A model generated the notes under the pieces. That model made no database searches. It was given only the letters and a program-made list of their open reading frames with translations, and was not told where the DNA came from. Below are positions 11,401 through 35,635 of a DNA stretch of 64,000 nt, one piece after another. Position numbers and translations under genes: made by a program. The DNA is from Lytechinus pictus (taxonomy: Eukaryota), in the NCBI RefSeq assembly GCF_037042905.1, contig NC_087246.1:47616001-47680000 (forward strand). Reading direction: 5' to 3'. How positions within the stretch are numbered: the first letter of the stretch is position 1; every line of letters starts with the position of its first letter.

Positions 11401-13682
11401 AGCCCCTTTTACACCTTCACGGATCATCCCGGATTGTCAATCCGGGATCATCCGTGTACAGTCCGGGACTACCGTGTACACACCGGCTACTCATCTTGCG
11501 CCATCCTTGATGTACCGGCATATCCGGGAGAAAAATTGAACAAGTCAAATTTTTCATCCTGGAGTACACGGACGGATAATCATCTGTGTTTATCCTTATC
11601 CGTGTAGCTGCCGAATGCATCCGGGAGGTCCTTGTTAATGCCGGTGTCATAGCCGAATTGGTCCAGGCATTCGAATACTAGCAGAACTAATCGGCGGCTC
11701 TTTTACACGCCGATTCGTTCTGGATTTTGTAGGGTGGTGCAATCTTCATAGCCGATTTGTTCTGACCAGGCGATTTGTTCTGATCCGCCATTAACACCCC
11801 TATATCAAAATGTGATATTCGAATCAACCATTTTCAACCAATAATTTGCTCCTTCAAATCAACCACACCCACAGAACAGACACAGCTGCCGATTTGAAAA
11901 TCTTGTAACGGGAATTTACGAAATATTTTAACAAGTACTCTTTAATTCCTGCTTCCAAGTGATTAAACAATGGAGGACAGCTGTGTGGAGCCAAGCCCTA
12001 TTCAAAGTGCTCCCTTTGTGCGCCTGTGCTATTGGGGGAAGCGATATGAATTTCAACTTTGATATAATTATCCAACAGGGCTGGCTTGTACGTCTATAGG
12101 TCTTCATTACTCATGCAATAAATGGGATGAGATTGGCGATTGGGGCGATGGGGGTGTGCTCATCAAAACCCCAAAAGTAGAAATAAGAATAAATATTTTG
12201 AATAAATAAATAAATGAATAAAAATATAAAGAAATTAAAAGACCTGATTAAGCCCAACAATTTGTGGTGCTAAAAGCACAGGGAACTGTCATTGACANNN
12301 NNNNNNNNNNNNNNNNNNNNNNNNNNNNNNNNNNNNNNNNNNNNNNNNNNNNNNNNNNNNNNNNNNNNNNNNNNNNNNNNNNNNNNNNNNNNNNNNNNNN
12401 NNNNNNNNNNNNNNNNNNNNNNNNNNNNGGAAAGGGTCTTTTACCTCCTTGGGAGAATAATACGAATACGTTTCAGATAATTATAGCAATACTAGAAAAA
12501 AACAAGAATAATGAAAAAAGTGCATCTTATTCAGCCCCCTAAAATAATGATATAATAGTAGCCTAATAATAACAATATAAATAATAGTGATATTAATAGG
12601 GCCTACATGTAGTAGTAATGATGACAATACTAATAATGATAGTAATAGTAATAATGATAATGACATTAATGATAACAATAATAATGATAATAATAATAAT
12701 ATTCAGTACTTTGCACCCCGGGAGCCCGACCTGATATTGGCTCAACCGTGACACGTGCGAAAAAAAAATCATTCTTGTACGAGGCTGAATACCTAATTTC
12801 TAAAACATTATAAAATGAATAATGTAATTCATAAGTTCTATGATAATATTGAAATTACATAAAATAAATTACACCAAGATATATTTTAACACATTTATCA
12901 AAGTAAATAATTATACTATTACCTTCGAAAATTTTGACAAATGTGGAACCAAACGGCTGCTCTCCTTTCGTATCGGCCAAAATTTAAGCCAGTTATTTGG
13001 ATCTGGCAGGCCCGATCGACTAACCGTTTTGGTACTGGCGGGACTAATCAGCTAGCCGTTTTGGGTCATCGACCCCCGGTTCCATTCGGCGACCCCACCG
13101 GCTATTTCCGGGTCGAATATTGTCCATTGTTTACGTACATGAATAATAGTCTGTTTTCATGGTCATGTTTGAGTACGCTACAGACGTTGCAAAAAGGGAA
13201 AGAAACTTCAATCTTGGCCAATGTTCTAGAGATATCCCAATAGAGACCGTAAGCAACCATGAAGGTCCGTGAAAGGACCCACTACATCCGTGTATTCCGT
13301 GCTGACTCCCGGTAGCTTATCAAGTAGAACCCTAATGCTATCTTTTCTATCCTTGTAGGAACAGCACTTTTCAGTACATTTCCATGTAAATACCCAGTTA
13401 AATCCGTATTCACTCCGGCAATGGTAGAAAAAATATCAACTTGGAACCCGGATCAACACGGACTTAGATCCGTGTTGCATCCTTGAAGGTGTACAAGGGA
13501 CTTAGTGCTACCTTTTCTATCCTTGTAGAAACAGCACTTTTCAGTACATTTCCATGTAAATACCCAGTTAAATCCGTCTTCACTCCGGCAATGGTAGAAA
13601 AAATATCAACTTGGAACCCGGATCACCACGGACTTAGATCCGTGATGATCCTGGTTGCATCCTTGAAGGTGTAAAAGGGGCT
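11401..13682. mobile_element. PIF/Harbinger-like non-autonomous element with nested insertions and duplicated right end
   Basis: 19-bp TIR agccccttttacaccttca / tgaaggtgtaaaaggggct. 170-bp tandem duplication at 13336-13505 and 13506-13682. Confidence 0.75.
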
Positions 13683-30700: not shown

Positions 30701-32378
30701 ACAACGAGGAAATAATAATTTATTAAAAGGACATATTTTGAGAAATATTGATTCAACATTCAACGAATACCAATGCATATATAAGCTTCTTGTATTATAG
30801 CTTAATTTACTACTGAATAATCTAAGTTGGCTAAATTACATTTTGATATTTCAAACCTTTTTCTCACTTTTTGATCAGATTTTAAAGATCCTTTCAGTAT
30901 TTGACGGTAATGCATTGATTAGACATTCCGTCTTGTTACTGCAGTATATCCATAAATTACTTATTACTACGAAATACATAATCATTCTAATTTCGTTGTT
31001 AGTTTCCAATACTAGTAGATATAAAATATAGTAAAGATAGAAATAGTTCCATTGATAGACATTCTAGTTGGATTTTCTCGAATGATTATTTTCCCGTCAA
31101 TCTGGAAATGGAAGGAAATAAACAGTTATCTCCACGTTCAATTTAAAATAGTCTTTATTGTCTCCTTTTACTGTTTTTTTTTCATAATGCAGATTTTTCC
31201 CGGACTCTATCGGCTCTGTCTGAAGCCATTAAATTTTTTTTCGAATAATACTCATTTGAATATGGGAATTTTATTTTGTCTATAATCTATTGTACTAAAA
31301 TACATGTACTTCTATTTTATCCCATATCCAATGTGGCAAGCAATCCTGTGAATATAAAAACATAATTCATTCTTGATTAATCTAATCTAACAATTCTAAA
31401 TAAAGAATATGATTCTTATGTCAAGTACAAGTAAATAAATAATAACTAATACGACAGGGGAAAAGATACCATTTCTATCTTTCAATTGGTCACAAGATGT
31501 TGGCCTAAATTGTAAGATCAAATCTAAACAGCGGAATTTCATCGAAAAGGGACGTTTCTGATATGAGGTCCAACTAAATAATCATAAAATAAATGTTGTT
31601 CAATAGCAGGCAAGTAGTTCGTAATAAATGTGTTTTAATCCGAAACCAAATCTGATACTGAATATGCCAGTTACAAAATAAGTTTAATGGTTAAAACACA
31701 TAAATCACCCTGAAAATCGTCAAGGGTCATTTGTGAGATAAGCCAAGACTACAAAAAGAGAACACAACCATAAATGGCAGATAATTGAATGCATAATGAA
31801 CTCGATATGTACATTACATAAAAATGCAGATGACGATATTCTGACATCAGTATTGTGATTCCCACGGGAGGAAGTGCAGTAAAAGAGTCTGGTAGAATAC
31901 AATTCATGTGTCAATGAGCATGGGATAAGAACTTGTATGTCGGATTATTTCGTCATTTTAATTGGTAAGATCACAATCATCATTTTCCATCTTGTCGATA
32001 GAAGCAATGCCTAACTTTCTTCCACGTGGAATCCTACATGATTAATTGTAAGTATTGAGTAGGTCGTGATTGCTTTGATATGAAGCGAGACTCTGTCAAA
32101 TCTTTAATGATGGACTTAATTTGTTCTTGATTACAATTCAATTGTGAACTCTTTGGACAATCACTAATATCAATGTTTATTCTCATTTGGCACTAGCGAA
32201 ATTTATGATATCCCTTTTTATTGTTTATGTGTTCGAAGCTTTTTGGAATAATCAGGTAATTATTTTATACAGAGAATCCAAAAATACCAACAAAACTGTT
32301 TAAAAAACCTTAGAGTAAAGAGATTACAAGGTTTTCACAAATTTATACAAGAGCGAGTGCCATTTCATTCCAGGTATA

Positions 32379-32575
32379 TCATACTGAATATGAATGACTT
32401 AATGAAGACGTTTTTTCTAGGATGCTCATTAATCTTGATTCCGAGCGCCCTATTTTACTGGCGCTGTGGAATCTGCTGCGTACATCGACTTCGTGTAGGA
32501 GAGGAATGCCGATATCACCTGGAACTCGTCGACCGAATCGTGGAGGATGGCCCAATGGTCGTGATGGCCTTCGAT
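32379..32575 (-). CDS. Putative neuropeptide precursor, last coding exon (RFamide: ...RRPSRPLGHPPRF-G-RR)
   Basis: Strong acceptor ttttcgtattctttatcatacAG (32576-32577), phase 1 compatible with exon 1. Encodes (N)RRPSRPLGHPPRFGRRVPGDIGIPLLHEV...SYSV*. AATAAA on the minus strand at about 32217-32222 and 32176-32181. Confidence 0.75.
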
Positions 32576-33602
32576 CTGTATGATAAAGAATACGAAAATG
32601 GAACACATTTGATAATTTGGTAAGTAAGACTTTCACACCCTAAACTAAAGACCGATTTACGGGATATGAGCGTATAGGCTTCGCTTAATGCATATAAATA
32701 CATAAATAAATATGTATCATGTTTATCATGTGTAAAAAAGAGGCTGGGCTATACAGGGGCATGGGCGACACCCCCTTCCTTCACTCTCCCTGGTGATTCA
32801 AGAGGAGACTAAGATGAATGCCACGGTTATTCAATTAAAAAATATAATGATGTTACTTTTTGGTCATCTTGCACCAAGATGTTTGATCATGTACGTCAAT
32901 TTCTTTTAGAAATAACCCCGGAGACATCTTAAAGGCCTAACGCTAAACGGGTATTTCTGTACAATAAGCCAGTTCGTAGTTCCTTTCTGCGCATGATCAA
33001 AAGATTCTACGCATGATCAGAGGAAGGTCATTTGTACTAAAGTGACATGGTGGTTTAAACTCTAATGAGATAAGCACCAACTTTGATGTCTTGATCATTC
33101 ATATATTATTTTGAATTGTGGTTTTCATTTACATCCACCGAAAAACAACAATGCGTCCACGAACGACTGGTATTTCACAGTTTGCTAAGTACATTGTGCA
33201 ACATGCTATGATATGCATTCAAAGTAGGAATGCAACAAATAGGCCTACTTTCATAAAGTGATCATTGGTGTGCTATTCTAATCACCCGGTCTATTCAATT
33301 TTTTCATCCTGCTATGTAAGGCAAGCTTACGTATATTTTGCTTTGAAATCTGCCTATCATAATGAAAGAAATGAAAGGTAATTTGACCAAAATTGTCCAT
33401 GAAGTAACTATGAACTGGTCTATGCCTTTAAGGTATAGTGACAGTGCATGAGGCACATTAAGAGAGGCGAAATGATGACTATATTTGTTTTGAATATCAG
33501 ATTGATGTGCAATTTTAATCTGAGATATGTCAACATTAACAAATCCACTCGAAGGCGACGCTCTGATCAGGGATAGGTTGGTCTTTTGGAATAAAGTCAC
33601 TC

Positions 33603-33900
33603 TTGACGAGGACCTTACGCTCCTCATCGTCCAATCTCTTACAAATTCCAGTTGCTAAGAAATCATGCGGGGAACGGGCCTTTGATCATGCAGGGCCTAA
33701 CCTGTGGAATTCTCTTCCACAGAGTTTGAAAACTCAGACTTCAGCGACCTCCTTCAAGGGCAACCTGAAAGCATACCTGTTTAAGAGTGCTTTTTGATAG
33801 ACATTGACTTATTGTTCAGACATTTATTATATGTTAATAGCTTTTGTTGTTGTTCTGCGCTGAATCGCCTCGAGCATCTAATCAAGATGGAAAGTGCGCT
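33603..33900 (+). mobile_element. L2 LINE 3' fragment (intronic)
   Basis: RTLRSSSSNLLQIP...GERAFDHAGPNLWNSLPQSLKTQTSATSFKGNLKAYLF*, a typical L2 ORF2 C-terminus, then a short UTR and a masked tail. Confidence 0.85.
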
Positions 33901-34986
33901 NNNNNNNNNNNNNNNNNNNNNNNNNNNNNNNNNNNNNNNNNNNNNNNNNNNNNNNNNNNNNNNNNNNNNNNNNNNNNNNNNNNNNNNNNNNNNNNNNNNN
34001 NNNNNNNNNNNNNNNNNNNNNNNNNNNNNNNNNNNNNNNNNNNNNNNNNNNNNNNNAGCTGACTGGTTGTTACAAATCCAGATGGTGCGAGGAAAGAAAA
34101 GGTAATTGTAATCAAAGCTGTTGATACTGCGTACTGGAGGTACAATTAAGAGATACAGTAGGTCTGAATACATCGGCAAGAGTCCCCGAGACTTATCTTG
34201 TCTTGGCCAGTGTACAATGAAGATGTCCTTAGTCATAGCGACCAATCAAAACTACGCGAATCAATTCTACGCCACCCTTTGCTGACGATAGAGTGAAAAG
34301 TGATTATCCAAAGACCCGGTTATACTGTGCTTGAAGCATTGTTTATGATTCAAAGTTTCAGATCGAAGATGTACATATTTATTATCCGAGAATGCATCGG
34401 AGTTCGCGTGCAGGGTCCCGTCAACTGTTGCAGACGTAATTTAAGGAAGCTCGTTCCAAGTTGTATGCATGTACTTCTTGCCCGATTAAATAAAGTAGCC
34501 CTCTTTTCCTGCACAGGTAAATGGCAGTCAATGGCAACCTACGTGGCATATGTCTTCTGGCTATCGACGACATGGATAGGATTGACTGATTGTTGAACTT
34601 GCCGATGAATGTGATGCATGTTAGATAATTTTCGCCGATCCACTTTAGCTCTAAAGATGGAGCAAAATCCAATTTAAAAAATTGCAGTTTATGAAAATCA
34701 AGCGGAATGCGGCAAGTTTAGGATTTCCCCCAGATTGAAAAAGCAATAGAGTTGTCAAACATTCCAGGAAAGATGCAGGCGTATGTGTAGCTCATTGTTT
34801 AATCTTAACCTTGTCAATGACTTTCCACGGCTAACTACATGGCACGTTAGAGATTTAGAATAAAAACATAGAATGGGTTTTGCTGGTATAAAAATGTTTA
34901 ATACTCACAATGACAGAGGTAAAAATGAAACATGTCGTTACGTGTAAACTATATTGTTTAGAGATGTAACATAACTGATTTCTTAC

Positions 34987-35170
34987 TTGTGGTAGTACTT
35001 GACTGACTCCTTTTCAGGCTACCAACTTTGCAAAGGTTATTGGTGTAAAAAGGTATGTAGTTTCGCCAACAGAGATGGTGGTTGCCTTGGCAACGCGTTG
35101 GAGGAAGTACACTAGCAACAACCATCACACACAGGCTCAATGTAAGGGCGGTGCGTTGTGAAAAATTCAT
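34987..35170 (-). CDS. Putative neuropeptide precursor, coding exon 1 (signal peptide + pGlu/2-Cys peptide + KR)
   Basis: Acceptor ttttttttgttcaatttccAG directly before ATG at 35170. Encodes MNFSQRTALTLSLCVMVVASVLPPTRC|QGNHHLCWRNYIPFYTNNLCKVGSL-KR-SQSSTTT. Ends in phase 1 at donor acaa|GTAAGA (34986). Confidence 0.75.
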
Positions 35171-35635
35171 CTGGAAATTGAACAAAAAAAAGGTATTATG
35201 GTTAGAACCTAATGAGAAAACACAACATGGTTTGTTTGCTGCTTTGGGGGTCGAAGGTAATAATACTAAAATCAACATTATGAATATGTACTATATAATC
35301 AAGGAGTGAATATCACAGTGATGGTCAAATTGTATGTGAATGTTAAAAATTAGATATAAAACCTGTTAATTATCTTATTATAAGTCGTGGCAAAGCGTAA
35401 AAGCATGCTGTATGAAATACTAATAACTTAAGTAAAACTTGGAGGAAAAATTTGGTACAATGCTAAAATGAAGGATGAAAATTAATTCGCAGTTGAAATT
35501 TAAGCTAGATTTAAGCTAAAGTAAAAATGAAGATTAAGGTGGTATTAGGTAATGAAAAATTAAGATGAGAAAAAGAACGTTGGAAGATAATCATTGATAA
35601 AGCAAGGCTTTAATCAATCGAAAGGGAAGATAAGT

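What the first reader, a model, noticed from the sequence alone, without database searches (positions are those of the whole stretch)
35009..35089. Second product of the same precursor: pGlu-capped disulfide-loop peptide
Seen: QGNHHLCWRNYIPFYTNNLCKVGSL lies between the predicted signal cleavage site and KR, with C-x12-C spacing. Inference: a cyclic, pyroglutamate-protected 25-mer released together with the RFamide. The layout (HLC...LC..KR followed by a phase-1 intron) resembles an insulin/relaxin B chain, which is normally C-x11-C. I found no CC-x3-C-x8-C A chain downstream, so a chimeric or independent origin is possible.
Basis: partly seen in the sequence, partly recalled or inferred. Interest (0 to 1): 0.75.

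Follow-up and report, generated by a model that had tools for sequence, protein, structure and literature searches.

The report
Cysteine-loop propeptide of urchin RFamide precursor
A small, unannotated but transcribed sea-urchin gene encodes, between its signal peptide and an RFamide peptide, a conserved 25-residue segment with two cysteines. It probably forms a disulfide-stapled hairpin and is cut off as a second secreted peptide, and it is not an insulin/relaxin B chain.

Summary
On the minus strand, 35089-35015 encodes QGNHHLCWRNYIPFYTNNLCKVGSL (C-x12-C), followed by KR at 35014-35009.

An RNA-run contig joins 34987 directly to 32575. This confirms the predicted phase-1 GT..AG intron and a 126-aa open reading frame: signal peptide, 25-mer, KR, 21-mer-Gly-RR, then a 48-aa tail.

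In a second organism label (probably a congener), the 25-mer plus KR carries three synonymous and no amino-acid changes among the displayed differences. The signal peptide and C-terminal tail carry five amino-acid changes.

A single-sequence AlphaFold model gives a beta-hairpin in which the two cysteines face each other.

There is no cysteine downstream, no Pfam hit (insulin, MCH and somatostatin included), no PDB hit and no homologue among 1.84 billion proteins. The gene is single copy.

So the insulin/relaxin B-chain idea is rejected. The idea of a cyclic peptide released together with the RFamide remains plausible, but it is not shown. Cleavage, pGlu, the disulfide and any activity are inferred. 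Conservation is shown in only one close relative.

The scan also noted the whole precursor on this window (s1-329180).

The parts
35171..35172 (-). AG of the splice acceptor (ttccag|ATG) in front of the first coding exon. The mRNA has at least one further 5' non-coding exon, which I did not locate.
   Evidence: X11 contig 8 has 88 nt upstream of window position 35172 that do not lie on 35173-35400; a polypyrimidine tract and CAG stand directly before the ATG.
35090..35170 (-). Predicted signal peptide, residues 1-27 (MNFSQR, then a 16-residue hydrophobic core, then PPTRC).
   Evidence: Rule-based reading only, because no signal-peptide predictor was available. In organism A, C14G and A19V fall here. 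A19V makes the alternative VVA|S cleavage site unlikely to be conserved.
35015..35089 (-). The 25-residue Cys-loop segment QGNHHLCWRNYIPFYTNNLCKVGSL (Cys7 and Cys20, C-x12-C). This is the subject of the finding.
   Evidence: Three synonymous and no non-synonymous displayed differences in organism A. Predicted beta-hairpin, strands 3-12 and 15-24, turn at Pro13-Phe14, mean pLDDT 74.
35009..35014 (-). Lys-Arg dibasic site, the predicted prohormone-convertase cleavage site.
   Evidence: Unchanged in organism A. Cleavage itself is inferred.
34987..35008 (-). First part of the RFamide peptide (SQSSTTT plus the first base of the Asn codon). End of the first coding exon.
   Evidence: The exon end at 34987 is fixed by the RNA contig.
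32576..34986 (-). Phase-1 intron (GTAAGA...ATACAG), 2411 bp. It holds two high-copy repeat blocks and a masked N run at 33901-34056.
   Evidence: the joint 34987|32575 in X11 contig 8, no RNA-contig depth on unique intron bins, and very high depth on 32949-33483 and 33591-33911; the N run.
32526..32575 (-). Rest of the 21-mer (N)RRPSRPLGHPPRF, then the Gly amidation donor (32534-32532) and Arg-Arg (32531-32526).
   Evidence: No displayed difference in organism A.
32379..32525 (-). C-terminal 48-residue tail without Cys, then the stop codon (32381-32379). The 3' UTR continues below 32200.
   Evidence: V91I, F97I and T117A in organism A. X11 contig 8 runs on to 32200 and beyond.

Best explanation
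The stretch encodes the N-terminal pro-region of a previously unannotated, single-copy, expressed sea-urchin gene for a small secretory precursor of 126 aa. The proposed sequence of events is as follows. The signal peptide is removed after Cys27. In the ER, Cys34 and Cys47 close a 14-membered ring that staples a beta-hairpin with a Pro-Phe turn. In secretory granules a prohormone convertase cuts after Lys53-Arg54, and carboxypeptidase removes KR. The new N-terminal Gln cyclises to pyroglutamate. The result is a 25-residue, aromatic-rich cyclic peptide (expected monoisotopic mass 2957.385 Da), stored and secreted together with the 21-residue amidated peptide ...RPLGHPPRF-NH2 from the same precursor. 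Shown here: the gene, the splice, transcription, the reading frame, and amino-acid conservation with synonymous change in one related organism. Inferred: the signal cleavage site, KR cleavage, the disulfide, pGlu and co-release. I cannot decide whether the loop peptide acts on a receptor of its own or serves mainly as a folding or granule-sorting hairpin. I rate a receptor-acting peptide at about one in three.
For: Real gene: an RNA-run contig joins 34987 to 32575. RNA-type runs of two organism labels cover the exons but not the unique parts of the intron. The ORF is intact at 126 aa with canonical splice sites. Selection: against organism A, the loop plus KR (27 codons) has 3 synonymous and 0 non-synonymous differences. 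The signal peptide has 1 and 2, and the C-terminal tail 1 and 3. With the intron divergence (19 substitutions in 206 nt) about 6 amino-acid changes would be expected in the loop plus KR (Poisson P(0) about 0.003). With the gene-wide synonymous rate the figures are about 3.6 and P about 0.03. Structure: the AlphaFold2 single-sequence model gives strands 3-12 and 15-24, so Cys7 and Cys20 are cross-strand partners. Processing logic, from established knowledge of prohormone processing: KR followed by Ser is a favoured site. RR followed by Pro inside the 21-mer is a poor one. Gly-Arg-Arg is a standard amidation signal. The pGlu cap and amidation of the starfish peptide ArPrRP were shown by mass spectrometry (PMC7314547). 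There is an even number of Cys after signal removal and none elsewhere in the proprotein.
Against: No peptide-level data exist. No signal-peptide predictor could be run, and cleavage after Gly29 would remove the pGlu. Conservation is known only for one close relative, and compared with the gene's own average amino-acid rate the loop is not significantly slower (about 1.1 changes expected). The X11 contig has 7 differences on the first coding exon, of which only 6 were displayed, so one more change of unknown place cannot be excluded. No homologue was found anywhere, so the gene may be young and lineage-restricted. The hairpin model comes from a single sequence, with pLDDT 74. One RNA-seq run read as raw reads had no read on the exons.
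Confidence: 0.55

Rival explanations
1. The loop is chiefly a folding or granule-sorting hairpin, with no receptor of its own. It would work like the N-terminal disulfide-bonded hairpin of pro-opiomelanocortin or the disulfide loop of chromogranins, which direct prohormones into regulated secretory granules. The loop peptide would then be a by-product. This overlaps with the best explanation on chemistry and differs only on function.
For: It lies directly behind the signal peptide. It is a single disulfide and a predicted hairpin. It is not amidated, and it carries no recognisable hormone motif or family match. The comparison with POMC and chromogranin rests on my own knowledge and was not tested.
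Against: Most echinoderm precursors described in the papers read need no such loop. The loop is aromatic-rich and would be pGlu-capped, as stable bioactive peptides often are. It is fully conserved while the tail changes.
Confidence: 0.3
2. KR is not cut, or only partly cut. The main product is then a 48-residue peptide with an N-terminal disulfide loop and a C-terminal RFamide, like the long kisspeptin-type peptides of echinoderms that carry an N-terminal Cys pair.
For: Echinoderm KP1-type peptides combine an N-terminal Cys pair with an amidated C-terminus in a single peptide (PMC4772807; AjKiss1a). Long and short forms are common among RFamide peptides. The whole stretch of residues 28-78 is unchanged in organism A.
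Against: KR-Ser is a strong consensus site (established processing rules). The Cys spacing is 12 here against 4 in AjKiss1a. No kisspeptin-type LPF or NxxSxxLxF motif is present.
Confidence: 0.12
3. The segment is a relic or chimera of an insulin/relaxin B chain.
For: Only a loose look-alike: HLC...LC, a dibasic site and a phase-1 intron further on.
Against: The spacing is C-x12-C instead of C-x11-C (motif as stated in PMC4772807). There is no Gly after the first Cys, and a Pro sits at the centre of the would-be helix. The model is a hairpin rather than a helix. There is no A chain and no Cys in residues 55-126. No Pfam hit at E<=10, and no similar exon elsewhere in the genome.
Confidence: 0.02
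4. The loop peptide is a host-defence (antimicrobial) beta-hairpin, not a neuropeptide.
For: Single-disulfide beta-hairpins are a common antimicrobial design (my own knowledge). The model is a hairpin.
Against: There are only two basic residues and no amphipathic cationic face. It shares its precursor with an amidated RF peptide flanked by classical neuroendocrine processing sites.
Confidence: 0.04

Closest known systems
Echinoderm kisspeptin-type precursor KPP1 (ArKPP, SpKPP, AjKPP)
   Same: A small precursor whose first product behind the signal peptide carries a pair of Cys thought to form a disulfide, followed by a second Cys-free amidated peptide. It has two coding exons separated by a phase-1 intron.
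   Different: In KPP1 the Cys pair and the amidated C-terminus sit in the same peptide, with a spacing of 4. Both peptides end in LPF-NH2-like motifs, and the intron lies between the signal peptide and the peptides. Here the loop peptide is not amidated, the spacing is 12, the second peptide ends in PPRF-NH2, and the intron lies inside the second peptide.
Echinoderm/chordate PrRP-type (sNPF/PrRP) precursor genes
   Same: A single RF/RY-amide peptide of about 20-25 residues. A phase-1 intron interrupts the N-terminal or central part of that peptide. [quoted passage not shown] The C-terminus is PRF-NH2, as in ArPrRP.
   Different: PrRP-type peptides lie directly behind the signal peptide, whereas here the 25-residue Cys loop plus KR stands between them. 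The described S. purpuratus PrRP-type peptide ends in RYamide, and its intron splits a Gly codon. Here it is RFamide and an Asn codon, so this is not that orthologue.
Cyclic neuropeptides with one disulfide (somatostatin/allatostatin-C, MCH, urotensin II)
   Same: One intramolecular disulfide closes an aromatic-rich loop. The peptide is released at a dibasic site.
   Different: Those peptides lie at the C-terminal end of their precursors and have shorter rings and conserved motifs. MCH, for example, has Met/Ile after the first Cys and a basic residue before the second. None of this is present here, and Pfam gives no hit.
N-terminal disulfide hairpin of POMC and disulfide loop of chromogranins (granule-sorting domains)
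   Same: A disulfide-bonded loop directly behind the signal peptide of a prohormone.
   Different: No sequence similarity. POMC has two disulfides. The comparison comes from my own knowledge and was not tested here.
Insulin/relaxin B chain
   Same: An HLC...LC pattern, a dibasic site and a phase-1 intron downstream.
   Different: Spacing of 12 instead of 11, no A chain, no helix-compatible core, no profile match.

Membership tests
Insulin/relaxin/IGF superfamily (B chain) | B-chain motif C-x11-C | tested here: not met
   12 residues lie between the two Cys. The motif is as stated in PMC4772807.
Insulin/relaxin/IGF superfamily (B chain) | A chain with CC-x3-C-x8-C in the same precursor | tested here: not met
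   No Cys in residues 55-126. The stop codon lies in the second coding exon, and the RNA contig continues as 3' UTR.
Insulin/relaxin/IGF superfamily (B chain) | Sequence-profile match (Pfam Insulin family) | tested here: not met
   hmmscan against Pfam-A at E<=10 returned no family for any of the three pieces.
Insulin/relaxin/IGF superfamily (B chain) | Central alpha-helix between the two B-chain Cys | tested here: not met
   Pro13 lies at the centre. The AlphaFold2 model is a beta-hairpin (single sequence, moderate confidence).
Melanin-concentrating hormone type | Peptide at the C-terminal end of the precursor; Met/Ile after the first Cys; basic residue before the second Cys | tested here: not met
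   The loop is N-terminal. Trp follows Cys1, and Asn-Leu precede Cys2. Criteria from PMC4772807.
Somatostatin/allatostatin-C type | [quoted passage not shown] | tested here: not met
   The loop lies directly behind the signal peptide. Criterion from PMC5627052. No Pfam hit.
Echinoderm kisspeptin-type KP1 | N-terminal Cys pair and an amidated kisspeptin-like C-terminus (NxxSxxLxF-NH2 or LPF-NH2) in one peptide | tested here: not met
   The loop peptide ends ...VGSL before KR, with no Gly. A KR site separates it from the amidated part, and no LPF motif is present.
PrRP/sNPF-type precursor (for the gene as a whole) | Phase-1 intron inside the N-terminal or central part of the RF/RY-amide peptide, and no intron in the C-terminal part | tested here: met
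   The intron lies between base 1 and base 2 of the Asn8 codon of the 21-mer. It is confirmed by the RNA contig, and the rest of the coding sequence is in one exon. Criterion from PMC7314547.
PrRP/sNPF-type precursor (for the gene as a whole) | [quoted passage not shown] | tested here: not met
   The 25-residue loop plus KR lies between them. Criterion.
PrRP/sNPF-type precursor (for the gene as a whole) | Orthology to the described sea-urchin PrRP-type gene (RYamide, intron in a Gly codon) | tested here: not met
   Here it is RFamide and an Asn codon, against the description in bioRxiv 10.1101/712687. The S. purpuratus sequence itself could not be fetched.
PrRP/sNPF-type precursor (for the gene as a whole) | Activation of the sNPF/PrRP-type receptor | not testable with these tools
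   Needs a receptor assay.

The most novel reading that the evidence does not exclude
The gene is a so far undescribed echinoid dual-hormone precursor. Its pGlu-capped, disulfide-stapled 25-mer would found a new cyclic neuropeptide family with its own receptor. Its PPRF-amide partner would be a ligand for one of the ambulacrarian receptors that still lack a known ligand; QRFP-type and neuromedin-U/CAPA-type receptors are named as such in PMC4062910 and PMC5627052.
Probability: 0.15. Interest if true: 0.7.

Novelty: new member of a known kind. Interest (0 to 1): 0.45.

Why it matters
Sea urchins are a reference group for reconstructing how neuropeptide signalling evolved, and several of their receptors still have no known ligand. 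This is an expressed, spliced, selectively constrained precursor that genome annotation missed. No protein database holds a relative of it. It adds a candidate RFamide and a candidate cyclic peptide to that short list, and both are small enough to synthesise and test on receptors. For the specific claim examined here, the main result is a correction. The loop is real and conserved, but it is a stand-alone hairpin and not an insulin-like chain. Its release and function remain to be shown.

Tried and rejected
1. Word-indexed protein searches with each coding exon, using the ORF plus region option so that proteins of about 50-185 aa were eligible: no candidate.

2. Exhaustive phmmer of the exon-1 product against 1.84 billion representatives: one hit at E 7e-4, confined to query residues 9-29 of the signal peptide. 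I rejected it as a compositional match.

3. Pfam at E<=10, PDB sequences at E<=10, ESM Atlas (best 0.77, chance level) and Foldseek against PDB with the hairpin model (best E 8.7): nothing usable.

4. Own genome: only the locus itself. The weak hits (E 0.03-7) have no matching Cys pattern in a comparable context and were rejected.

5. JGI metagenome contigs: no relative.

6. Literature: full-text search for six sequence fragments, for the S. purpuratus PrRP accession and for sea-urchin neuropeptide surveys gave no paper showing this sequence. The supplements of the crinoid paper hold no PrRP sequences.

7. Arnp21 of the starfish has the same layout (signal peptide, about 22-mer, dibasic site, about 20-mer, dibasic site). 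However, both of its peptides are amidated and no Cys pair is reported, so I did not equate the two.

8. Tandem paralogues: a six-frame scan of the window for RF/RY/RW-Gly-basic and LPF-Gly-basic motifs found only this exon and short chance ORFs.

9. Not done: looking up the spliced 126-aa protein in assemblies. It has no contiguous reference in the window, and I did not type it.

Full report
What is there. The window is AT-rich animal DNA. Earlier notes of this scan name the genome as the sea urchin Lytechinus pictus. I did not verify the species name myself. On the minus strand an exon starts with ATG at 35170, directly behind a polypyrimidine tract and CAG.

It encodes the following, in order:
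- MNFSQRTALTLSLCVMVVASVLPPTRC
- QGNHHLCWRNYIPFYTNNLCKVGSL (35089-35015)
- KR (35014-35009)
- SQSSTTT plus one base, up to a GTAAGA donor at 34986

The second coding exon starts at 32575 behind ATACAG. It encodes (N)RRPSRPLGHPPRF-G-RR and a 48-residue Cys-free tail, up to a stop at 32381-32379. The finding's coordinates (35009-35089) are exactly the 25-mer plus KR. The Cys spacing is 12.

Is the gene real? Yes. I laid four public runs on 32200-35400. A 1391-nt contig from the RNA-type run X11 lies on 35172-34987 and continues, base for base, at 32575-32200. That is the predicted phase-1 intron. The same contig has 88 nt upstream that do not lie on 35173-35400, so there is at least one more 5' non-coding exon.

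The two RNA-type runs (X11, organism label A; X8, organism label B) cover the exons but not the unique parts of the intron. The DNA run X1 does cover those parts. X8 is almost identical to the window (1 difference in 152 nt), so label B is probably the window's own species.

Two unrelated samples of label A share the same set of differences from the window: 3-7% in non-coding DNA, with indels. So A is most likely a congener. That is my inference, because the labels are coded. One RNA-seq run read as raw reads (X21) had no read on the exons, which fits restricted expression.

The gene is single copy in its genome. It is absent from the protein collections searched, so it is evidently unannotated.

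Selection. I mapped the displayed differences of organism A onto the reading frame:
- Signal peptide: C14G, A19V and a silent change in Pro24.
- Loop peptide: three silent changes (Asn30, Tyr38, Gly50).
- RFamide peptide with its Gly-Arg-Arg: nothing.
- C-terminal tail: V91I, F97I and T117A.

By Nei-Gojobori counting, the loop plus KR has 3 synonymous and 0 non-synonymous changes over 65 non-synonymous sites. The tail has 1 and 3. With the neighbouring intron's divergence (19 substitutions in 206 nt) about six amino-acid changes would be expected in the loop plus KR, giving P(0) about 0.003. With the gene-wide synonymous rate the expectation is 3.6 and P about 0.03.

There are three caveats. 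First, this is one close relative only. Second, measured against the gene's own mean amino-acid rate the loop is not significantly slower. Third, the X11 contig has seven differences on this exon, of which six were displayed, so one change of unknown position remains possible.

Shape and processing. After removal of a 27-residue signal peptide the proprotein has exactly two Cys. The site T-R-C|Q fits the -3/-1 rule and lies five residues after the hydrophobic core. The alternative VVA|S is lost in organism A through A19V.

A single-sequence AlphaFold2 model of residues 28-61 gives two strands (3-12 and 15-24) around a Pro13-Phe14 turn, with mean pLDDT 74. In that register residue i pairs with residue 27-i, so Cys7 and Cys20 are cross-strand partners. 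A disulfide-stapled hairpin is therefore the natural reading.

From established processing rules, KR followed by Ser is a favoured convertase site. The RR inside the 21-mer is followed by Pro and is unlikely to be cut. Gly-Arg-Arg is a standard amidation signal. An N-terminal Gln exposed by signal cleavage commonly cyclises; in the starfish peptide ArPrRP this was shown by mass spectrometry (PMC7314547). All of these steps are inferences for this gene.

What it is not.
- The spacing is 12, not 11 (motif as given in PMC4772807).
- There is no Gly after the first Cys.
- A Pro sits in the middle of the would-be helix, and the model is a hairpin.
- There is no A chain and no further Cys.
- Pfam gives no hit at E<=10.

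MCH-type and somatostatin-type peptides lie at the C-terminal end of their precursors and have their own motifs. Neither condition is met here. Echinoderm kisspeptin-type KP1 peptides do have an N-terminal Cys pair. But that pair has a spacing of 4 and sits in the same peptide as an LPF-amide end.

PDB sequences, the ESM Atlas, Foldseek and metagenome contigs gave nothing.

The gene as a whole. The 21-mer's C-terminal PRF-amide, its length, and above all the phase-1 intron inside its N-terminal half recall PrRP/sNPF-type genes (PMC7314547). So does the lack of an intron further on.

Two features differ. In PrRP-type precursors the peptide lies adjacent to the signal peptide. Also, the described S. 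purpuratus PrRP-type peptide ends in RYamide, with the intron in a Gly codon (bioRxiv 10.1101/712687). Here it is RFamide and an Asn codon.

So this is not that orthologue. It may be a diverged paralogue or an unrelated RFamide gene. Reviews state that ambulacrarians have QRFP-type, neuromedin-U/CAPA-type and other receptors whose ligands are unknown (PMC4062910; PMC5627052). This makes any new amidated peptide of interest, but nothing here links this one to a receptor.

Function of the loop. There are two readings I cannot separate. In the first, it is a second bioactive peptide. In favour: it is aromatic-rich, capped, cyclic and fully conserved, while the tail drifts. In the second, it is a folding or granule-sorting hairpin, like the N-terminal disulfide loops of POMC and the chromogranins (my own knowledge, untested), and is released as a by-product.

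A third reading is that KR is left uncut, giving a 48-residue looped RFamide analogous to the long echinoderm kisspeptins. This is less likely. A defence-peptide reading is unlikely, because the peptide has only two basic residues.

Verdict. The gene is a new, orphan member of a familiar kind, a small multi-product neuropeptide-type precursor. Its depth of conservation and its products remain to be established. The scan also recorded the precursor as a whole on this window (s1-329180).

Noticed in passing
window 32949-33483 and 33591-33911: Two blocks inside the intron have enormous depth in every run laid, RNA and DNA, with many internal joints and loose ends. They are high-copy interspersed repeats. 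They probably account for most of the 'share of words' that brought the runs in.
   Followed up: no
window 33901-34056: A masked or gap N run inside the intron. I left it as it is. It does not touch any exon.
   Followed up: no
window above 35172 (minus-strand upstream), position unknown: The mRNA contig carries 88 nt of 5' sequence that is not in 35173-35400. So the gene has an additional non-coding first exon and a promoter further upstream, which I could not place.
   Followed up: partly
window 32526-32575 and 34987-35008: The partner peptide SQSSTTTNRRPSRPLGHPPRF-NH2 is split by a phase-1 intron, as PrRP-type peptides are. It differs from the described S. purpuratus PrRP-type peptide (RYamide, intron in a Gly codon). 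It may be a paralogue or a new RFamide type.
   Followed up: partly
window 13047-13130, minus strand: A short open stretch reads ...IRPGNSRWGRR..., that is RW-Gly-Arg-Arg, the ending of echinoderm luqin-type peptides. It is 28 codons between stops in GC-rich, repeat-like DNA, with no signal peptide seen. It is probably chance.
   Followed up: partly
window 32382-32525: The C-terminal tail holds an RSRF motif that is not followed by Gly, and its Phe is Ile in organism A (F97I). It is therefore not a second RFamide.
   Followed up: yes
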